DNA from: Klebsormidium nitens
Taxonomy: Eukaryota > Plantae > Klebsormidiophyceae
Length of the DNA: 64,000 nt
Assembly (NCBI GenBank): GCA_000708835.1
Contig: DF237033.1
Coordinates: 62,001 to 126,000 of the forward strand
Direction: 5' to 3'
In this document: positions 8,577 through 45,466 of the stretch, piece by piece
Layout: each line of letters starts with the position of its first letter
Position numbering within the stretch: position 1 is the first letter of the stretch
Notes under the pieces: generated by a model
What the model saw: only the letters and a program-made list of their open reading frames with translations
What the model was told of the DNA's origin: nothing
Database searches by the model: none
Translations under genes and position numbers: made by a program

Positions 8577-11500
8577 CTACTTCTTTTCCATGTCATCCTT
8601 CTTCTGAACCGCCGCAATCAATCCCTCGGAAACCGAGCCATCCTTTTCCAACTCTGCATCATTTGCGCTTTGTACATCCGTAGTGACAAGATTCGCCCTA
8701 CTCGATCCGGTCCCCGCACTTCTGTCATTCCCGTTTGAGCCCACTTTTCGAGGCCTCTTAAATATGCCGGGTACGGGCACACCCGCGAGAAAACCTCGCC
8801 GATCTCGTTGCTCTACTGGTACACTCGCAGGCCCTGTCTCGCCCGCCGCTGCTCCAAAACGCCCACTGGCACCGCCCACACTCCCCGCCAACGGGGCCTC
8901 TCCTTCCCGTTGCGCCGGTTCCGTTTCACTCTTGCGCAGCGTTGCTGCCACCGACTCCCCAACCCGCTCACTCACTCCTTCCTCGCTCGCATTTTTCACT
9001 GGTTGACCCGATCCTTCTTTGCTTGGTACTTCCCCCTTGTGCCCACTAACCGTGTTGACAGATTCTTTCGTGACCCCTTTCTCACTCCCTTCTCCCTCCT
9101 TGCTTTTCCCAGGCCAGGTAAATCCACCAACCGAATTCAGCCCCTTCCTCTGCTTGTCAATCCTAGCTACCAGTCCCTTCAGTCCCGTTTCCCCCCTCAC
9201 TTCTTCCAACTCGACCTTTCCCAGGGTCTGAGTCGACCCCTCCTTTTCCAAACCCCCTACGTACCCCTTCTCGTGCGACCCGCCAACCCTACCAGTTATT
9301 CGCCCGGTTCCCGCTGTTTCTATGTCCGTTACCGTTTCCGTTTCCGTTTCCCTCTTGTTCCGCCCGCCAATCCGCTCGACAAGACCCTTCACGCTTCCAG
9401 CAACCGTACTCCGCTGACCGGACGTCCGGGGCTTTGAGACGCGCGTCCGAAGGTCCGACAAAACCGTTCGTAACCGGGGCAGCTTTTCCCGCAGGTCGGG
9501 CAGCTTGGAAAACTGGGGAAAGACGGATCGCCGCTGATTGGCTTCCGCTTCTTCCAGCGCCCGGAGCTCCGCTTCCGCTGTTGCCTGAAACGGAACGGAA
9601 TGCTAATGTTTGCTTTTGATCCAGTAAGTAACTGCGGCGAAAGAAGAATTCTGGATACGCGCGCTCGTTCCGTTGACAATTGAATGCAGCGAAGAGAAAC
9701 GAGGCGGCTCAGGTGCGCTCCAATCTCCCCCTCATTCCGCTCCGTTCTCCAACGCTCATCCCGCTCCCACCTCAAACCTTCTCCTTCAAACTCATGGCAA
9801 CATTGGGAATCCGCTTCGATGTTTCTTTCGCCTTTCTTTGAGGGCCGGTGCGGAGACAACGACGGCTTAAGGCAGTACAAGACAGCATTGCGTTTCGTAG
9901 CGTTCACGTGACGAAGCTAAGCATTCAGACTGCTTCCCAGACAAAGAGACTTGTTTCTCCACCCCCCACGGATGGTTGACGGATCCATGCGTAGACATTC
10001 AAGAACCCTAAGTTTGCGAAAAGCTCAACACTTACCGCTGCTTCGCGCGCCTGCCTCCGGTCCTAGTCTTTGACCGCGCACTTCGCCAGCTTTGTTTCCG
10101 CAGAGGTCACCCGATTTTTTTTTAATGGAAGCAAACACCTATAAACGCAAACTTGCACGATATAGAAGAACCTACTTTGCAAAAGCCCAACACTCACCTC
10201 CGCTTCGCGCGCCTGTTTCCGGTCTTGATCCTCTATTGCGCGCTTTGCCAACTCTCGTTCCGCAAAACGACCCGCTCCGTTGCCCCATAACCCAATTGCA
10301 GCTTGACAAAGCAAGTGCAAATCTGAGAACTTGCTCATAAGTCACCTCCCACTTCACGCGCCTGTCTCCGATCTTGATCCTCCATCGCGCGCTTTGCCAG
10401 CTCGTACCTCGCCAAAGCCACCGGGTTATCAAAAGTGCAAGCCGACTTGTTCGATAGAAAATCATTTTAGGAGCAACCAAAACCCTTAGCAAAAGCCCAA
10501 CACTTACCTCCGCTTCGCGCGCCTGCTTCCGGTCCTGGTCCTCCATCGCGCGCTTTGCCAGCTCGTATCCCGCGAAGTTCATCGCCCCGAGGGGGGCGAT
10601 CCAGAAGAAGCGCGGCAGAGCGCCCTTGTAGAGCGCCATGACGCCCTCGTTCTTCAGGATGTGCACAAACGTCGCTCCCATGCTGCTCGCCACGCCTGGC
10701 AAAAGCACAAGCTTTTTATTTTCATTTTCTGAACCTGAATGTTTTGCGGTGTTTGAAGATACATATTTCAAGGATTGATAATTTGGTGGTTCGAGTTTTG
10801 GAGTCGAGGCAAAAGAGCGCCCCCTTGTAGAGCGCCGTCACGCCCTCGTTCTTCAGAATGTGGACGAACGTCGCTCCCATGCTGCTCGCCACGCCTGGCA
10901 AAAGCACGACAGTACGCGTTTCGGAAAACATACTTCAAAGAGTAGGGGTTAGGTAGTTCGGGTTTTGAATGCGTCTGGGTAGAAAGAGCGAATTTCCGTA
11001 AAGCGCCAGAACGCCCTCGTTCTTTAGATTGTAAACAAACGTCGCATCCCATGCTGCTAGCCCGCTTGGCACTAACGAAGTCGATTCACTTCAAGCTTTT
11101 GGAACCATGTGTTTTGGGGGTGTTTGAAGTTCCATACATCTAGGGTTGGGGGTTCGCAATAGAATGTGAATAAGTTTAGGCAGAAGAGCGCATCCTTAGA
11201 GATCGTCATGACACCCTTGTTCTTCAGAATGTGGACGAACGTCGCTCCCATGCTGCTTGCTACGCCTGGCAGAAGCAGACGAGTTTGGGAACAATTCCCT
11301 GCGTTTGCAATCGCGTCTTCGACGGGTTGAAATTTCGGTACTTCGGTATGTTATTGGTCCTGATTCTCGCACTCCTCGTCGAAGGCCATCACTGCCTCGC
11401 TCTCCAAGATGACAATGTACGTCGGCCTTAAGGAGGATCAAGAGGGGCGTCTTGACAACTGCTAAGGTCTTGAGCTGAGGTGTCGATCGGGTTAGGATTC

Positions 11501-36081: not shown

Positions 36082-39000
36082 ATGGGGCCCGCTTTGCACG
36101 CAGAAGGATCTGGGCCAGAGGTCGATAGCATCCTGTCGGACGTGCGACTATCTTCCAATACCAGTCCCGAGCCACATCATCGCCACATAGGAGTCCCCTA
36201 CCCAGAAGCGTCAGGGTCCGAGCCTCGTGAAATCGATTTCCTTTTGTCCCGCTCTGAGGCGCCCATTCACATTGGACACCGGCATGAGGTGCCCGTTCAC
36301 ACTGGCCGGCAACATGTCCACTCACAGTGGAGTGACGGCGATGACAGCGAAGGGGAGGAGGAGCGGCTACTTCTGGAGGGGCCCGTTCACACCGGACGGC
36401 AGAACGGGGAGGTTCTTCGCGCCGGAAACCAACTCGAGGGGCACGTTCACATCGGTTCTCGGCACAAGGTCGTCAGGTGGAGCGACGGCACTGAGTGGAG
36501 CGTGGAAGAAGGGATCGGTGTGAATGGGGCCTCGAGGCGCCAGGTGTTTGCTGAGGTGGCGAAGCAGGGGGCGCTTGCGGGTCCGATCATGGGGATGAAC
36601 GTCGTGTGGTTTCTACGGTCGATTGTGTCCATGATTTTCCTGGGGAGACTGGGCGAGCTGGAGCTGGCGGCTGGCTCGTTGGCTATCTCGCTGGCAAACG
36701 TGACTGGTTACAGGTGGGAACGGACTCACAAACGGTTCTAGGTGGCTTAACGGTGTCTTCTCTTCAAGTGCCTGACAATTTTTTATCCATCTTTCTGCCA
36801 AGCCTTGGTTGGCTCCAGATGGAATCATTCTCGCTTTGCCCAAGTTGGATTGAGAAGTTTGTCAAGAATGGAGAGTGGTCAGGATCCAAGTGGACGCTTT
36901 GATTTTTGTCTGCTCCGCTGAAATATCTCATTGGCGGCAGGGGGCAGGTACAATCCTGATGTGTCATAGTAGAGGTTTTCAGACTTCTTGAGATTTTCGA
37001 TACAGGCGTGCGCACATCTATGGTTCTGTAGGTGTTCATGACAAGCGTGTCATGCTTTCCTGGATGATTTGCTGGGCAGTTTTGTTCCATTCTGAAGAAC
37101 ACAGATCATTAAAAGCAGAACCCATCTCGCCGTTCACTGCTTGCGACACCTTTCGTAGACCCTTTTTTGGGGATGATTCACTCTCCCAAACGCTTACTTC
37201 AAGCGTCCGCGTAAGCATTTTGGTAAGGTATTAGAGAGCGGTTCTGAGATTTGGATCAGGTGAACAGCACGCTACCATGCACATCAGAGTGTATTCTTCT
37301 TGAGTTTCTGCCCCATCTCCCTTTTCGAGTCTGCATCCTGTAAGTTTCAGCAACGGGTTTTGAGCTTCTTATCTACCAAGCCCATGGCGCTAGGCATCAG
37401 CAGGTCTCTTTTTCCCTGTCAGATAGAAGGGTTTCATTCTCACTTAGTCGAACTGAAGTCTCTTATCATAACCAGCCAAGCGCTTATTATCACACTGTCC
37501 TGCAGCATCTTGTTCAGATTGGCGACCAGTTGAGAGTCCCTTATCTTCCAGTTAAAACGGCTCAAAGCACTATCACAAAACGGCCGCATTTGAACTTGGA
37601 TTGCTCAAAGGACCCAATTTTCGCACTGCCGATTCTGATGTTCTTTACTTTCTCCTGCGCAGCATTTTGTACGGCCTCTCGACCGGCCTCGAGCCCCTCA
37701 TCTCCCAGGCCTACGGCGCGAAGCGCTACCACACAATGGGCCGCATTCTGAACCGAGGGATCGTCATTCTCCTCTTTGCTTGCATTCCGATTATTGTCAT
37801 CTGGGCGAACGCGGAAAGTTTGCTGCTCCTGATGAAGCAGGACCCGGGCATTTCGCGAGAAGCGGGGCGGTACCTCCGGTGGATGATCCCCGACCTAATC
37901 GCGCTTGCGGGGGCGCAGCCAGTGCGGGTGTATCTGCGGTCACAGGTGGGGAATCCAACTTCGTCCTTACTTGTTACGGTTTTCAAGCTGCTTTTTATGG
38001 AGGGGGCCGCTAGTCTTGTGCGGAAGGAGGGGCGGTATCTCCGTTGGATAATCTCTGACCTGATTGCTCTTGCGGCGGCGCACCCAGTCCGGGTATATCT
38101 ACGATCGCAGGTGCGTTGAAACCATTCTCCTATCTCTTTACGGGCTTAAGAGCGCTCGAGTGTCAGGTTTATAGAGTATTCTTGCTGCTTCTGAGAAAAC
38201 AGGACTGACTAACGTTCTTCATGAAGTGGGGAGGAATCCTTGGTAGCTGATGCCCGACCTTATCGCTCGTGGAAGGGACGCAGCTGATGCGGTTTGACTA
38301 CGGTCCTTGCAAGTGCGAGATCATTAGCTTCTTCCCCGCCTTCAGACCGGACTTGGAGGGTGCCGGAGGGTTAGGTCTCTACGTATTCTATCTGCTTCCA
38401 ATGAAGCAGGGTGCAGACATTGCACGAAAAGTCGGTGGTATATCTGTCCGCTTATCCATGCGCCAGTACTGGGCTTCAACAGTCCATTCCCCGATCAACT
38501 TCTTTCTCAGTCTCGGCCTCAAGTTGGGCGGTCAACCTTCTGGGTAAGAACAATTCATAGGCAAGAGTTGCGCCCATCTGACATATCATCGTTTTGCTTG
38601 CATCGGGGATGACGTTCCCGCTCCTCCCGTGCGCGGTGATTGCCTTCATCTTCCACGTCCCGATCAACTTCCTGCTCATCTTCGGTCTCAATCTGGGCCC
38701 TATTATTCGCATCGCAATCGAACTTGCGCAATCATAGCGCACAACTGAACTGATTTTCATTCGCATACCAGGGCTTAACGTTTCCCCTCAACCCGCGTGC
38801 GGTCATCGCCTTCATCTTCCACGTGCCCATCAACTTTCTTCTCATCCCCGGCCTCACCTTTGGGCCCTATCCCTTTTTCTCCTCACAGCCACCTCAACTG
38901 ATCACAATACGTCTTTGTGCAATTTTTCAGGGTCTGACTTTCCCGCTCATCCCGTGCGCGGTCATTGCGTTCACCTTCCACGTGCCCATCAACTTACCTG

Positions 39001-42000
39001 TCGTTCGGGCCTCAAATTGGTCGCTTTCTTTTTCTTTCCTCACAACCCGCGCCTTAAATCTGCATTCGTGACAACTCCTCCTTTTTGCAACTCAGGGCTT
39101 GACGTTTCCGCTCATACCCTGCGCGGTCATCGCCTTCATCTTCCACGTGCCCATCAACTTCCTGCTCATCTTTGGCCTCAAGTTGGGCGCTGCGGGGGCG
39201 GCTCTCGCGTCTGGCGTCACGGATTTCAACCTGCTGTTCCTTATGGTTCTCTACATCCGCTGCTTGGGCGTTCACAAAAAGTCGTGGACCGGATTTTCAA
39301 TACGGAGCTGCTTCTCGGAGTGGGGGCCGTTCCTGCGGTACGTCGGCTTTCTGCTCCTAAATTCTTTTCCCCAAAGTTGTGGGCTTTTCGAATTTGAGGA
39401 ATCTGGTTTCATTCCAAAAGGGTTTGGAGACTTCAACCTGCTGTTCCTCATGGTTCTGTATATCCGCTGCCTGGGCGTGCACAAAAAGTCGTGGACCGGA
39501 TTTCCAATACGGAGCTGTTTCTCGGAATGGGGGCCGTTCTTACGGTAGATTGCATTATTCTCGGTTGCCTGTCTTTTGAGATGATTATTTCCAAAGGGTT
39601 ACACTAATTTCAACCTGTTGTTCCTCATGGTTCTTTACATCCGCTGCCTGGGCGTTCACATAAAGTCGTGGACCGGGTTTCCTCGAAGAGCTGCTTTTTG
39701 ATATGAAGTCGGTTTTGCGGTGAGCGGGGTATTTCCGGGCGGCTTTTCTCTTCGAGACGGAGGCTGAAATCTTCTGACTCTCTTGGCAATGATCGAAGAC
39801 AGAATTGGCACGTTAAGGTTGACCAGATTTGCCTTTGAGCTGCTTTCAAAGGTGCGGCAATGGCTGCAATGAGAGGATCACAGAATGTCTGACTGCCAAC
39901 ATCAGGTGCGATCAAGTTCAAAGAGCGAGGCTTTCCTCTGTAATCGACTTCGCCTCTCCCTGCTTGGCTCCCTTTGGTCCACCGCCCATACCCTCAGCTA
40001 CATCTGTGATTGCCCGTCGTCCAAGCTTTGCGTCTTTTCAGTCGGTGCGTCTCTTCTGAGGCGGTGCTTTTGACTCGGTCAACCGGGACCGAAACAAGGG
40101 GCTCGCACAGGATTCCAGTTAATGCGAAATCGAAACGCACCGGTTATCCGAGCACTTACCCGTGTCACCTGCTGCAGATTGGCGGCGCCTTCCTGTGTTG
40201 CCACGTGTCTTGAGTGGTGGTGCTACGAATTGCTGCTGCTCTTTGCGGGCTTGCTGAAGGTAAGCTGCGTCCCTCTTTTTGTCGTCTTACCTGCCCGTTG
40301 AGACCTATGACCTAGTTCGCTTTCGTTTCATTGAACCTGTCTGCACGACCTCCGTTTGGTTACGAGCGCTATTTTGGTTGCTTCTGTGGATCTCTTCGAG
40401 ATTTTCACTTTTTCAATCCTGTCCTCGAGTGTCTTGTGTCTTGAGTCAATGGGCTCGTTTGCAAGTTCTCCGTGTGCTTACACGCGCTTGTTCGGATGCT
40501 TACTTGAATCTTGTGTTGGTAATCTTTACTTGGCCTTCGATTTGCGACATTGTCCTGCTTGCGTTTCGCTTTACCGACTCGTCGTTTGCAAGTTGCCCAT
40601 GTTTTCAATAAGAGCGCTTCTTCGGTTGTGGATAGGGTAGACCTATTTGTCCTTTCTCCTCTTAAGAATCCCATCCGGCTATATTGTGCGTGAAAGCTGT
40701 CGAAACGCGGCAAGTCACATGCACCTTTTTCGCATGAGGTCCCCAGTCGCGCTCAAGTTATGGTTTCTCCCAAGCTTTCTTCCTCCCTTATTTCCGTTTC
40801 TCGCATGCAAGCCGGTTATTTCGCTGTTTCCATTTGCTCTTCCGTTCCCCTCCACAGGAATCCGTCCAAGAAACCGGCACCTCAGACTCTTCATCTATGG
40901 GTTCGAGTGTTGGATATTTTCAGGGTTTCCACGATGATCAGTGTAGTCTTCCTCGTCGTTCCGGTCATTCCGTCATTCCGTTCCACGAGCAGGACCTTGT
41001 CCGATGGAACGTCACGTTAATCGTGTGTATTTATCCCAGCGACACTTGATTCGTCGGTTCAATCTCTAGGTTACGTAAGGTGTAAAGTGCAGCTGTTTTT
41101 AGGCGTTCCGGTCATTCCGCTGTTCCGCTCTGCTCCGCAGGACCCCGTCCGCTCGATCGCCGCCATGACCGTTTGCCTAAACCTCGACAGCCTCTGTTAC
41201 ATGGTTCCCACCGCACTGAGTTCCTCCCTTAGGTGAGCCCAAACGTCTCCATAACCCGCCGCCTTTTCCCATAGCTTATGGTTGGCTATCATACCTTATT
41301 GCAGAACCCCGTGGAATCCGTAGCCGTGATGTCGGTATGCCTCAACTTCGGCGCGCTCGCGTACATGGTCCCCGCAGCGATGAGCTCGTCGTTGAGGTGA
41401 GGGGGGGTCGTTTTCAGTCGCTTTTTGGGGGGGCTGGTATGAACGAGAGGTGAGTGGTGGTGATTTCCAGTGGGGTTTTCGTTGTGACTGGATACAAAGT
41501 GGTCCCGTTGTGAGCGGGCTGGTTCACTCGTTGGCGGGGTTTGTGCAGAATATTGGAGGTAGGGAGAGGTAGTCTTGATCATCCTGTAAAGCGGTGAGGA
41601 CGAGGCATTCAGGGTTCAGGATTTCTCAGATTTTGGTTCAGATTGTTAGGGTCTTTATTACAAGTCTCGAAGCGACGTCTGCTATGGTTCTTGGGGGGAA
41701 AGATTATGTAAAGACCATGGAAATGCATCTGGAAAACGCGCTTCGGTATAGCAAGACTTCTGACTGTAGATTCTATACCGATAGGCGCATGGCTCGTTGC
41801 AGACAGACTCTGCTCTGCAAGGGGACCCTTGTCTCCTTCTGTGCGGGGTTTAGCGTTCTCGCTCTGTTGCTACAGTCTAGATCCAAGTCGATATCTGCAT
41901 CGCACAGATTGTCAGCAAGCTCGGTGCGAAGAGCCTTTGCTTTTGATTGATCAAGTTGGCCTTTCGTAACCTGTTCAGGGCTGACGTACTTTTATTCCAG

Positions 42001-43936
42001 TTTTCTTCGAGTCAACGACATTCCCTGTCGCTCTCGGAACCAGAGTTCTCGTCTCCAGCACGCGTTTGGGGACCGAGCTTGGGTGCAAATGGCCCTTCCT
42101 TTGCCAAGTTGATTGCACAAGTCAAGTACTTTCCTTGTTCACCTTCTGTTGATTCATGACCGACACTTTGTTGGCCCTTTCCGCAGCACGCGACTCGGCA
42201 ACGAGCTCGGCGCAAACAGCCCTTTCTCTGCTAGGTGAATCACCCTACTGAGTACTTTTCGATTTAGTTCTGGGAGCTCAATGGACAACTACGCTGAAGT
42301 AACCCTGTCCTTAACCGCAGTCCCTAACCCACTCGTTTCCTTCTCCTCAGCCCGCGAGTTGGTCGGGCTCGGCGCAAACAGCCCTTTCTCCGCTAGGTTA
42401 ATCACCCTATTGAGGTCTTTTCGATTAGTTTTTGGAGCTCAATGGACAATCACGCTGAAGTAACCCTGCTCTTATTCGCGCCGCTCGACCTACTCTCTTT
42501 TTGCCTTTTTCGCAGTGCGCGAGTTGGTAACGGGCTCGGCGCAAACAGCCCCTTCTTCGCCCGGTTGATCACGCTACTGAGGGGTTTGTTTTTCGTATTT
42601 GGAGCTCAATGGGCAACTACGCTGAAGTATCCCTGCTCCTAACCGCGCCTGCCTAACCTACTCTTTTTTTTGCCTTTTTGGCAGTGCGCGGGGTTGGTAA
42701 CAAGCTCAGCGCAACCAGCCCCCTCTTTGCCCCGCTGGCCACCTTATCGTACACTCTTTTCACCCGTTTTTGGAGCTGCAACCAAGCTGACTGATATAAC
42801 CCTTTTTCAAGCGCGGTTCCTGATTCTCTTTCTGTTTCCCTTTCGCAGCGCGCGCGTCGGTAACGAGCTCGGCGCAAACAGCCCCTTCTTCGCCCGGTTG
42901 GCAACGCAAGTGGCCGGTTGGCTGTCCGTCTTTCTGGGGGGCGTTTCCGCGCTCATCCTGATACTGACACGTCACCAGATCGGACGGCTGTTCACCGATA
43001 ACGAGGACCTGCTGAAAATGATCGCTAGTATCCTTCCGCTTGTGGCGCTCTGCCACGTGGCAGACAGCCCGCAGACGACGCTCTCGGGGGCTCTCCGGGG
43101 GATGGCGCGGTGAGTTCACAAGCCCCGGGCACCAAACCAAAAATCCTAACCCAAGCAACCGTTCGCTCCACGGGCATACCCACCCTAACCATCGAACTGA
43201 CCCTACGCGTCACTTGCGAAAGTACTTGAATCTGCCAGACGTCGGATGTAAAGGGTCCAGATAACGACGGATGCAGGAAGGATGACCGTCTAAAGCAAGA
43301 AAGTTGTCGTATAGCTGAAAATGGGATGCGATATTCGTCTTCAGTCAAAGTTTTGTTTTGTGCGATGGAAGGGCAAACCCTCTCGATTTGTATCGGTACT
43401 TCGCATGGCTTGTTACCCAAGAGATGGGGGTACCTTTATCGCCATTTCCAGCCTAGTCATGTTTCCAGGATGTGCGTTGCAGTCTTCGCTCACAAAGCAT
43501 TCTTCCTTCATGCCGCACTTCACCACAATACTTGGCAATCTTGAATAGACGTGACCCAACACAAAGGGCTCTGGCGCTTTCTTTCGGCGCTGATGCGTTT
43601 GGTTCTTGCAGGCCCACTATTTTCCTGGTGATCAACCTGGCGTCGTACTACGGGTTTGGCATGCCGGTCGCCCTCTTCCTCGCTTTCCACGCCCACTTGG
43701 GAGTGCCCGGAATGTGGATGGGCCTTTTTTGCGCGCAGATTGTGCAAGTAATCTTAGTGTGCGCGATCGTTTTCCGAACGGACTGGCCGATGCAAGCGGC
43801 AAAGGCCCAGGAATTGACGTGTCAGATCGATGAGAATGATTCGAAGGAGTCGACAGAGAGTCTGCAGAAGGGGCTTGAGATGGGGGATGTTGAGAAGCAG
43901 GAAGTTTCGGATATATACGGCCACGAAGACGACTGA
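36082..43936 (+). CDS. DTX: MATE (DTX) efflux transporter, DTX48-56-like, ~638 aa; exons 36082-36713, 37663-37945, 39096-39337, 40178-40259, 41141-41232 (or alternative 41305-41396), 42849-43109, 43612-43936
   Basis: [77 protein letters not shown] and YYGFGMPVA are MATE motifs. The model is phase-consistent (1917 nt). The ATG start is the most 5' in-frame one and is less certain. Confidence 0.92.
37946..39725 (+). repeat. Echo arrays around MATE exons 2 and 3 (donor echo 38110; acceptor echoes ~38606, 38771, 38930; donor echoes 39544, 39719)
   Basis: Copies of YLRW..DLIALA..PVRVYLRSQ|GT, AG|GLTFPLIPCAVIAFIFHVPIN and FNLLFLMVLYIRCLGVHKKSWTG..GPFLR|GT, period ~160-207 bp. Confidence 0.93.
41305..41396 (+). 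CDS. Alternative (putative mutually exclusive) MATE exon 5b, NPVESVAVMSVCLNFGALAYMVPAAMSSSL
   Basis: TTATTGCAG acceptor and AG|GTGAGG donor. Exactly 92 nt, same phases (0 to 2) as exon 5a (41141-41232), open frame, 19/30 identical residues. Confidence 0.75.
42040..42910 (+). repeat. Acceptor echo array of MATE exon 6 (5 copies plus the real site)
   Basis: CAG|.GCGCG..T.GG.AAC.(A/G)GCTCGGCGCAAACAGCCC with acceptor AG ending at 42058, 42186, 42350, 42515, 42684 and 42848 (real); period mostly ~165 bp. Confidence 0.93.
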
Positions 43937-45466
43937 TAGATGCGCGCGGATCGATTGAGAACATATATGGGCGGACGACACCAGCCGACTTTTAGTTGGG
44001 TTACCATGAAAGAGGTATTGAATCTTGAAATCGGAGCAATTGAGCTTGTGACATGCTGGTCCCGCGGTGTCAAGAAGCAAATATATGAGCTATCCAGGTG
44101 AGAGTTCCAACACCGTCTGTTTTGACGGCACGTTTTGGAGGCAGTCAATATAGAAGCAAAACCGATATCTTAAACCCGGTATCTGAGCCTTCAGAGTGAT
44201 GTTTGCGTGGCCGGCTTGATGAAAAAATGGTATTACTGCATGAAGCGGACACTTTGCAGCATACCGTCAAGGCTCTACTTACTGCCTTAAGATTGGCATG
44301 CACATGCGTGCCCATTGTGATGATTGCCTATGAGCTGCATACTGTAGCACGGCCGGGCCACCAACCGTGGCCTACTTAGCTTAATGGAATCAGCCACTTC
44401 CGAAGCGCATCATTTGCTTGAAACAATTGAGCTACTAGCGCGGCAAGGTCAACTTACAATGATACCGTACGGACTTTATGGAAGTGCTGGCATTACTCTC
44501 GGTGTGATGCACGTACGGAGATTCGCGTACGTTTCAAGTTTATGTAGTACCATGGGTCCCTATGTCACGCATGCCCTGCGCCCCGGTGCATGCATAATTG
44601 AATACTAGTGCCATGTATGATCGTACATGTCGCATGCATGCATGCAATTGTTGTGCGCCGACGTTAATCAAATCAGAATCTAATTAACCATGCACATTAT
44701 ATTCATGAATAATGGCGCCGGGCATCATTTGTTAAGAGCCGCCAGGCTTTCATGAGTCCGCAGGCATGCATGAGGCACTTGCTAGCTAGAGTAATTTGTT
44801 AGCATGCAGTCTAGGTTACTTGCATCCACCCGGACATGACTTACAACCGTAGCAAGTTGTAGAGTCAAGAACACCCATCCCGGCTTGGCCGGAGGCCGTG
44901 CTCAATGGCTGAATGAGGCTAAGGGCGTTAATAAATTGGAAGTTACCATGCATCGCATTGAGTATGCTTCCAATTTTAATGATTTTGCGGTGGCCAGCCG
45001 CGCGGCGGCTTCTGCACTCCGGCCGATCCTCCCAAGAGCTAGATCCAGAGCGCACTGAAAACGCGTATATATGCTGGCAAATTGCATGAAATGATCGAGC
45101 CGCCATATCCGACAACAATAAGATCGAAACTCTGTGATACCGTAGTACACCTCAGCTACTCATTGGGTTTGCAAACCAACTCAAACGGGCCTTCGTTATC
45201 CTATGGATGCGGCCTGAGATCGTGTCAAGCTCCGAACCAGGCCCGAGCTTACAAAACCGTCCTGTGGATATCGTTTCTGGAAGTCACGTTGCTGGACTCA
45301 ACGTAAGCCAGTCGTAACACCTAAAGTACACATTGGGCCATAGCTTATAGGCAGCGTCTAAAGCCCCCCTAGGCAAGTCAACCACAACCGCGACTGCGAG
45401 CAATCTAACCTAACGTATCCAGCCAGTCCACCGACCGACCAAACTACCGTGCGCGCACACCGCCAT

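What the first reader, a model, noticed from the sequence alone, without database searches (positions are those of the whole stretch)
41141..41396. Candidate mutually exclusive exon pair swapping the TM8 region of the MATE transporter
Seen: exon 5a (41141-41232, DPVRSIAAMTVCLNLDSLCYMVPTALSSSL) is followed 72 nt later by 5b (41305-41396, NPVESVAVMSVCLNFGALAYMVPAAMSSSL). Both are exactly 92 nt, phase 0 to 2, with AG/GTGAG sites and open frames. Of the 19 identical residues, 10 use different codons, so silent sites have diverged heavily while length, frame and splice sites are kept, unlike the partial echoes elsewhere. Including both exons frameshifts the gene (92 nt). The 72-nt spacer is far shorter than any other intron I modelled here (shortest 276 nt). 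Established: equal-length, non-triplet duplicated exons separated by a very short intron are the classic mutually exclusive exon signature, and such exons are regarded as rare in plants. Inference: the swap changes the TM7-8 loop and TM8, including Asp vs Gly (NLDSL/NFGAL) two residues from the position aligning with human MATE1 Glu300. The two isoforms may differ in substrate or ion coupling.
Basis: partly seen in the sequence, partly recalled or inferred. Interest (0 to 1): 0.85.

Follow-up and report, generated by a model that had tools for sequence, protein, structure and literature searches.

The report
Either-or exons in algal MATE transporter
A toxin/metabolite exporter gene (MATE family) of the green alga Klebsormidium nitens holds two twin 92-base exons, and RNA carries one or the other but not both, giving two versions of one membrane helix, only one of which is in the public annotation.

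Summary
Exons 5a (41141-41232) and 5b (41305-41396) are both 92 nt, phase 0 to 2, with cag|...|gtgag sites, and are 65% (nt) and 63% (aa) identical.

- **RNA:** assemblies from four studies show exon4>5b>exon6 in all four runs. Two independent runs also show exon4>5a>exon6. No 5a>5b joint was seen. 5b is the major form.
- **Frame:** including both exons, or neither, shifts the frame.
- **Annotation:** the public K. nitens protein (638 aa) equals the 5b isoform exactly. The 5a isoform is unannotated.
- **Conservation:** a related alga's contig keeps both exons (92 nt each, same sites) although its introns no longer align. dN/dS is 0.10 (5a) and 0.04 (5b).
- **Structure:** exon 5 encodes the first three quarters of TM8. 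The swap changes the equivalents of AtDTX14 Asn281, Ser290 and Gln296.
- **Origin:** the 164-nt spacing lies in the range of this genome's local "echo" duplications.

How exclusion works is unresolved; a short spacer plus frameshift/NMD is my best guess. The scan has already reported similar either-or exons in other genes of this genome, so this is a new member of a known kind.

The parts
36082..43939 (+). MATE (DTX48-52-like) transporter gene of Klebsormidium nitens, 7 coding exons in each isoform: 36082-36713, 37663-37945, 39096-39337, 40178-40259, 5a or 5b, 42849-43109, 43612-43939
   Evidence: The spliced 5b model is identical over 638 aa to the NCBI 'MATE efflux family protein [Klebsormidium nitens]' P0152. 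GT..AG joints in RNA contigs support the introns from exon 3 onwards. The AF2 model has 12 TM helices.
40178..40259 (+). Exon 4, the common upstream exon (end of TM7, with the CLEWW motif and Glu398 = AtDTX14 Glu265)
   Evidence: Its donor at 40259 joins to 41141 or to 41305.
40957..41027 (+). Decayed partial copy of the 5a acceptor region and first ~35 nt of 5a; not seen spliced
   Evidence: Local alignment score 57 against a shuffle maximum of 36. The in-frame reading hits a stop (read from the sequence). No joint to it was found.
41141..41232 (+). Exon 5a, the minor and unannotated alternative (TM8 version with Asp414, Arg417, Thr423, Leu428, Asp429, Cys432)
   Evidence: Joints 40259>41141 and 41232>42849 occur in runs X1 and X11, from two studies. 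The ortholog 5a' at L001 8594-8685 gives dN/dS 0.10.
41233..41304 (+). 72-nt spacer intron. The conserved AGCTTAT at 41273-41279 is a likely branch point for the 5b acceptor, 45 nt from the 5a donor and 26 nt from the acceptor.
   Evidence: AGCTTAT is the only block shared with the relative's 96-nt spacer. No 41232>41305 joint was found.
41305..41396 (+). Exon 5b, the major alternative and the one in the public annotation
   Evidence: Joints 40259>41305 and 41396>42849 occur in all four runs. P0152 carries 5b. The ortholog 5b' at L001 8782-8873 gives dN/dS 0.04.
42849..43109 (+). Exon 6, the common downstream exon (end of TM8 with the NELG gate residues, TM9, TM10)
   Evidence: Its acceptor at 42849 is joined from 41232 or from 41396.

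Best explanation
5a and 5b are a genuine mutually exclusive exon pair in the Klebsormidium nitens MATE gene. An old local tandem duplication of a ~164-nt unit copied the whole 92-nt exon together with both its splice sites. Each mature mRNA takes one copy.

The two proteins are each 638 aa and differ at 11 residues, in the last loop residue and the first 29 residues of TM8. TM8 lines the C-lobe cavity and helps form the extracellular gate. The conserved differences between the two versions are Arg vs Glu/Gln, Ile vs Val, Ala vs Val, Thr vs Ser (AtDTX14 Ser290), Leu vs Phe and Cys vs Ala. In addition, 5b has Gly at the AtDTX14 Gln296 position of the hydrogen-bond network beside the proton-binding Glu/Asp pair, where 5a has a polar side chain. 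The isoforms therefore probably differ in substrate preference or proton coupling; this is inferred, not shown.

Exclusivity is most likely enforced by two things together (inferred). First, the spacer is very short: about 45 nt from the 5a donor to the candidate branch point. Second, any mRNA with both exons or neither is frameshifted, carries an early stop, and would be open to nonsense-mediated decay.

Shown here: the sequence anatomy, the splice junctions, the frame consequences, the conservation and purifying selection, and the annotation status. Inferred: the functional difference, the exclusion mechanism and the origin by the echo-duplication process.
For: - **RNA junctions:** both junction pairs have GT..AG ends. 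The 5b form is in 4 of 4 runs at contig depth 31-151. The 5a form is in X1 (depth 68/76) and X11 (7.9/7.9), which come from two studies. No 5a>5b joint was found.
- **Reading frames:** both single-exon isoforms give an intact 638-aa frame. Including both exons or skipping both gives early stops.
- **Annotation:** P0152 from K. nitens is identical to the 5b isoform and sits in a cluster of size 1.
- **Conservation:** the relative's contigs L001/L002 keep both exons at 92 nt with cag|...|gtgagg sites, while the flanking introns do not align. Each exon groups with its ortholog: 5a-5a' 24/30 aa, 5b-5b' 27/30 aa, cross pairs 17-20/30. dN/dS is 0.10 and 0.04 at dS ~1.1, with Fisher p = 2e-5 and 1e-7.
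- **Family fit:** both exons score alike against a MATE family profile, 41.3 and 39.9 bits.
- **Structural mapping:** an ungapped alignment to AtDTX14 places exon 5 on residues 281-310. All named key residues are conserved except Gln296 (roles from PMC5696359). In the AF2 model TM8 is helix 415-452 with pLDDT 90-98.
Against: - The RNA evidence comes from assembled contigs, not raw reads. Rare double-inclusion or skipped forms could have been dropped, and depths are only rough.
- 5a was not recovered in 2 of 4 runs.
- The 5a junctions rest on short bubble contigs with 28-30 nt on each side.
- 5a evolves faster than 5b (7 vs 3 nonsynonymous changes), and its Asp429 is Ser in the relative.
- The relative's spacer is 96 nt, probably long enough to splice, so steric exclusion cannot be general.
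- There is no protein-level or transport evidence for either isoform.
- Only one related genome could be examined.
Confidence: 0.8

Rival explanations
1. 5a is a leftover copy from this genome's local exon-edge duplications. It is occasionally spliced in by mistake, and only the 5b protein matters.
For: The gene is full of unused partial exon copies. Decayed copies of the 5a acceptor lie just upstream. 5a is the minor form, is missing from the contigs of X15 and X19, and is absent from the public annotation. It also changes faster than 5b.
Against: 5a has kept its length, frame and both splice sites, with dN/dS 0.10 against its ortholog, while neighbouring introns diverged beyond alignment at dS ~1.1. 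Six residues that distinguish 5a from 5b are the same in both species. 5a makes up roughly a fifth to a third of the junction depth in two studies. The other echo arrays are lineage-specific, whereas this pair is shared.
Confidence: 0.12
2. Both isoforms are made and translated, but the swap is functionally neutral. The pair persists because losing either copy has no cost, or because each copy has become needed only for expression level.
For: Most of the differences are conservative (I/V, A/V, T/S, L/M). No functional data exist. Both versions fit the family profile equally well.
Against: Neutral redundancy would not keep dN/dS at 0.04-0.10 in both copies over dS ~1.1. It would also not keep the same version-specific residues in two species. 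Three of the changed positions are named gate or network positions in AtDTX14.
Confidence: 0.15
3. The apparent 5a transcripts are an assembly artefact, or come from a second locus or strain, rather than from alternative splicing of this gene.
For: The 5a joints have only 28-30 nt on each side. One contig per run fits two places of the stretch.
Against: The flanks match exon 4 and exon 6 of this locus exactly, and the middle matches 5a exactly (all contigs are 99+% alike). The same form appears in two studies. 5a and 5b are only 65% identical, so they cannot be confused at 95% likeness. No close paralogue exists in the protein collection; the next best hit is 48% identical.
Confidence: 0.03

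Closest known systems
Mutually exclusive exons born by tandem exon duplication in animal membrane-protein genes (e.g. SLC25A3 exons 3A/3B, and the alternative exon pairs of voltage-gated Ca and Na channels); general class as in PMC5740500 and PMC8373072. The specific gene examples come from my own knowledge.
   Same: Adjacent homologous exons of equal length and phase, with one used per mRNA. The swap replaces one transmembrane segment while leaving the fold intact. Both copies are conserved across species.
   Different: This case is in a streptophyte alga, a lineage where internal mutually exclusive exons are rarely reported (PMC3923563). It is also in a MATE transporter, for which I found no such report. 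No regulatory RNA structure or tissue programme is known.
Steric-hindrance mutually exclusive exons (alpha-tropomyosin exons 2/3 type); from my own knowledge
   Same: The intron between the twins is very short, with the candidate branch point only ~45 nt from the upstream donor.
   Different: The minimum donor-to-branch distance in this alga is unknown. The relative has a 96-nt spacer (~66 nt to the motif). Exclusion may therefore rest on frameshift and decay instead.
Splice-junction 'echo' arrays of this genome (earlier scan notes s1-316217, s1-277635)
   Same: A local tandem copy with a spacing of 164 nt, within the 92-193 nt range of arrays in this window. Decayed acceptor copies lie next to 5a.
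   Different: Echoes are partial, unused and lineage-specific. Here the unit contained the whole exon with both splice sites, both copies are used, and the pair predates the split from the relative.
Eukaryotic MATE transporters AtDTX14 (PDB 5y50) and human MATE1 (9r10); land-plant DTX48-52 clade
   Same: Sequence match E = 3.5e-41 over the C-lobe, ungapped. Glu265, Trp266, Asp383, Asn406, Tyr410, Gln443 and the gate residues are conserved. The model has 12 TM helices.
   Different: There is a long disordered, His-rich N-terminal extension of ~125 aa. The Gln296 position is Gly or Asp depending on the exon. Land-plant relatives have a single copy of this segment, fused to the next coding block.

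Membership tests
Mutually exclusive exon pair (tandem-duplication type) | Neighbouring exons are homologous | tested here: met
   65% nt and 63% aa identity. Both match the same 30 columns of a MATE profile, at 41.3 and 39.9 bits.
Mutually exclusive exon pair (tandem-duplication type) | Same length, same phase, each with its own acceptor and donor | tested here: met
   Both are 92 nt, phase 0 to 2, with cag|...|gtgag sites.
Mutually exclusive exon pair (tandem-duplication type) | Mature RNA joins each exon directly to the common flanking exons | tested here: met
   Joints 40259>41141, 41232>42849, 40259>41305 and 41396>42849 are present.
Mutually exclusive exon pair (tandem-duplication type) | Never both and never neither in stable mRNA | tested here: inconclusive
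   No 41232>41305 or 40259>42849 joint was found in four runs. Contigs drop rare forms, however. Both forms would be frameshifted.
Mutually exclusive exon pair (tandem-duplication type) | Both exons maintained by selection in relatives | tested here: met
   L001/L002 keep both exons; dN/dS is 0.10 and 0.04. Only one related lineage was available.
Steric-hindrance type of exclusion | Donor-to-branch-point distance below the spliceosome's minimum | tested here: inconclusive
   The distance to the conserved AGCTTAT is ~45 nt in this genome and ~66 nt in the relative. The minimum for this organism is not known.
Competing RNA structure (docking/selector) type of exclusion | Conserved complementary intronic elements | tested here: not met
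   Only chance-level inverted repeats were found, and none is shared between the species. Local folds are no more stable than shuffles, z = +1.1 and +0.6.
U2/U12 splice-site incompatibility type of exclusion | One intron with U12-type sites | tested here: not met
   All sites are GT..AG with GTGAG/GTAAG donors and no ATATCC/GTATCC motif.
MATE transporter, eukaryotic subfamily (PF01554) | MatE domains, 12 TM helices, C-lobe acidic pair | tested here: met
   P0152 carries PF01554. The AF2 model has 12 TM helices with mean pLDDT 80, above 90 in the core. Glu398 and Asp516 correspond to AtDTX14 Glu265 and Asp383.

The most novel reading that the evidence does not exclude
Klebsormidium's habit of making ~90-190-nt local tandem copies at exon edges acts as a generator of either-or exons whenever the copied unit holds a whole short exon. 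In this MATE gene the resulting switch toggles Gly against a polar or acidic side chain at the Gln296 network position beside the proton site, together with two extracellular-gate residues. One gene would then yield two exporters with different ion coupling or substrate range, used in different conditions.
Probability: 0.3. Interest if true: 0.75.

Novelty: new member of a known kind. Interest (0 to 1): 0.58.

Why it matters
Internal mutually exclusive exons are scarcely documented in the plant lineage. This pair has junction evidence from independent RNA data sets, and its two copies have been kept apart by selection since before two algal lineages split.

It adds an unannotated protein isoform to the reference alga for studies of the move of plants to land. 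It also offers a natural two-version experiment on MATE helix TM8. The same protein backbone carries either Gly or Asp at the position of AtDTX14 Gln296, and Ser or Thr, and Asn or Asp, at two predicted gate positions.

Taken with the other cases the scan reports in this genome, it supports the view that local tandem duplication of short exons is an active source of protein diversity in this alga.

Tried and rejected
- **Searches with the 30-aa exon translations against solved structures** gave nothing because the queries are too short. I mapped through a Selaginella homologue and then through P0152 instead.
- **A degenerate DNA pattern for the exon core** found no match in metagenome contigs, although it matches L001/L002. 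That collection simply lacks those samples.
- **The search for related loci with exon 6** returned only distant relatives (48% identity or less), all with a single copy of the segment. These are useful as outgroups but not as close relatives.
- **A search for full-length close relatives of P0152** gave none above 48% identity. Conservation therefore rests on one related lineage.
- **Competing RNA structures** were looked for with inverted-repeat searches and local folding in both species. Nothing was above chance.
- **A first fragment-tiling alignment (A1)** was misaligned by the N-lobe/C-lobe pseudo-symmetry and was discarded. A3 was used instead.
- **A worry that the TM10 acidic residue was missing** was rejected. 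Asp516 aligns with AtDTX14 Asp383.
- **Literature searches** found no paper on mutually exclusive exons in Klebsormidium or in MATE genes.

Full report
**1. The observation**

The two stretches are as described.
- 41141-41232 and 41305-41396 are both 92 nt. Each is preceded by cag and followed by gtgag, and 72 nt separate them.
- They translate in phase 0 to two related 30-residue peptides.
- 60 of 92 bases and 19 of 30 residues are identical, and 10 of the 19 identical residues use different codons.
- Differences fall 10/5/17 on codon positions 1/2/3.
- A degenerate pattern for the shared core matches only these two places in the window, against none in shuffles.

**2. The gene and the organism**

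I built the gene model from splice sites and RNA joints: exons 36082-36713, 37663-37945, 39096-39337, 40178-40259, 5a or 5b, 42849-43109 and 43612-43939. With either exon it gives an intact 638-aa frame. With both exons or neither, the frame shifts and stops early.

A profile search tiled from the window's exons recovered P0152, NCBI's 'MATE efflux family protein [Klebsormidium nitens]', 638 aa. It is identical residue for residue to my 5b isoform and differs from the 5a isoform at 11 positions. This has three consequences:
- The window is K. nitens.
- The public annotation holds only 5b.
- P0152's 90% cluster has a single member, so a full-length 5a isoform is not in that collection.

The nearest land-plant proteins are DTX48-52-like, at 48% identity or less over this region.

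**3. RNA evidence**

I laid contigs from four runs of four studies on 38200-44100. The contigs are spliced, so they are RNA. After the stated cut shifts the joints are:

| Joint | Runs | Contig depth |
|---|---|---|
| 40259>41305 and 41396>42849 (5b) | all four | 151, 31, 36, 36 |
| 40259>41141 and 41232>42849 (5a) | X1 and X11 | 68/76 and 7.9/7.9 |

- All joints have GT..AG ends.
- No 41232>41305 joint and no 40259>42849 joint is listed.
- In X15 and X19, long contigs (2474 and 878 nt) carry exon 4-5b-6-7.
- The 5a form sits on short bubble-type contigs with 28-30 nt of each flanking exon, which is what a de Bruijn assembly produces for an alternative exon.
- In X11 the two 5a joints have the same depth, so they most likely lie on one contig. 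That is my inference, because the piece itself was not listed.
- 5a is roughly a third of the junction depth in X1 and a fifth in X11, and was not recovered in X15 or X19.
- Contigs show presence, not absence, and their depths are rough.

**4. Conservation**

An exhaustive search with exon 6 found genomic ORF fragments that are 84% identical. Their contigs, L001 and L002 from two JGI metagenome samples, hold the orthologous gene of a related alga.
- Both exons are present there: 5a' at 8594-8685 and 5b' at 8782-8873. Each is 92 nt with cag|...|gtgagg sites.
- Exons align at 76-86% nt identity, but the introns do not align at all.
- Each exon is closest to its own ortholog: 24/30 and 27/30 residues, against 17-20/30 for cross pairs. 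The duplication therefore predates the split.
- Nei-Gojobori estimates give dN/dS 0.10 for 5a and 0.04 for 5b at dS about 1.1. The excess of synonymous change is significant, with Fisher p = 2e-5 and 1e-7.
- Six residues that tell 5a from 5b are the same in both species: R vs E/Q, I vs V, A vs V, T vs S, L vs F, C vs A.
- In 41 distant MATE loci the segment is single and continuous with the next coding block. The pair is therefore specific to this algal lineage.

**5. What the exon encodes**

P0152 aligns without gaps to AtDTX14 (5y50) from TM7 to the C-terminus, at E = 3.5e-41. P0152 numbering equals AtDTX14 numbering plus 133.
- Exon 5 covers AtDTX14 residues 281-310.
- The AF2 model of the 5b isoform (pTM 0.75; pLDDT 90-98 in this region) has TM7 at 381-409, a loop at 410-414 and TM8 at 415-452. 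Exon 5 therefore encodes the last loop residue and the first 29 residues of TM8.
- Every residue that the AtDTX14 paper names is conserved except Gln296. The named residues are Cys263, Glu265, Trp266, Gly277, Asn281, Ser290, Asn316, Gly319, Asp383, Arg394, Asn406, Tyr410 and Gln443.
- The exon swap changes Asn281 (N in 5b, D in 5a), Ser290 (S vs T) and Gln296 (G vs D).
- In that paper, Asn281 and Ser290 belong to predicted extracellular-gate pairs. Gln296 is part of the C-lobe hydrogen-bond network around the proton-binding Glu265/Asp383, and the C-lobe cavity lies among TM7, TM8 and TM10 (PMC5696359).
- In the relative, 5a' has Ser at the Gln296 position and Tyr at the Asn281 position. What is conserved is 'Gly in 5b, a polar side chain in 5a', not the Asp itself.

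A functional difference is a reasonable inference, but it is untested.

**6. Origin**

This gene is full of partial, unused tandem copies of exon edges, spaced 159-170 nt apart. Across the window such arrays have periods of 92-193 nt.
- The 5a-to-5b spacing is 164 nt. In the relative it is 188 nt, because of a 24-nt duplication of the donor region.
- Decayed copies of the 5a acceptor lie upstream at 40957-41027 and, more weakly, at 40815-40867.
- The other arrays differ between the two species.

I infer that the same kind of local duplication once copied a unit containing the whole short exon, and that this made a usable pair.

**7. How exclusion works**

This is not settled.
- The spacer shares only AGCTTAT with the relative's spacer. 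That motif is a plausible branch point, 26-30 nt before the 5b acceptor. It lies ~45 nt from the 5a donor here and ~66 nt in the relative.
- I found no conserved complementary elements, no unusually stable local fold and no U12-type splice sites.
- My best guess is a short spacer that disfavours splicing between the twins, plus loss of frameshifted products by nonsense-mediated decay.

**8. Novelty**

Mutually exclusive exons from tandem duplication are a known kind. In plants they are rarely reported (PMC3923563). I found no paper on them in Klebsormidium or in MATE genes. Earlier notes of this scan report similar pairs in other genes of the same genome, so this is one more member of a set rather than a lone oddity.

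Noticed in passing
window 41397-42848: The intron between 5b and exon 6 is covered by contigs at depth ~35 in X1 and ~4 in X11. The gene's other introns are at 4-12 in X1 and 0 in X11. One contig runs unspliced into exon 6 (42538-42876). This suggests slow removal or partial retention of this intron.
   Followed up: no
L046 6940-7180 and 7450-7506 (NCBI assembly GCA_017506865.1, protein P0050): A distant MATE gene in another organism has a near-identical tandem copy of the same TM8 segment (31 aa, one residue different). Both copies are included in the annotated protein. There is also a partial copy of the next exon's start. It could be an independent young case of the same duplication.
   Followed up: partly
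window 38605-38701 versus 39095-39191; L001 3828-3924: The farthest unused copy of the exon-3 start is 88.7% identical to the relative's real exon and keeps an open frame. The real K. nitens exon start is 83.5% identical. The gap is only 5 of 97 sites, so it may be chance.
   Followed up: partly
window 42113-42848 versus L001 10000-10330; L001 4125-5690: Echo arrays are lineage-specific. K. nitens has four acceptor copies before exon 6 and the relative has none. The relative has a long row of exon-3 donor copies spaced ~113 nt apart.
   Followed up: partly
window 41204-41206 and 41368-41370; L001 8657-8659 and 8845-8847: Residue 22 of the exon is Val in both K. nitens copies and Ile in both copies of the relative. 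This is a parallel change or a small gene-conversion tract within an otherwise diverged pair.
   Followed up: no
window 36082-36460 (protein residues 1-125): The N-terminal extension is predicted disordered (pLDDT below 50). It holds repeated His-rich motifs (HIGHRH, VHTGRQ, VHIGSRH) that are partly kept in the relative.
   Followed up: no
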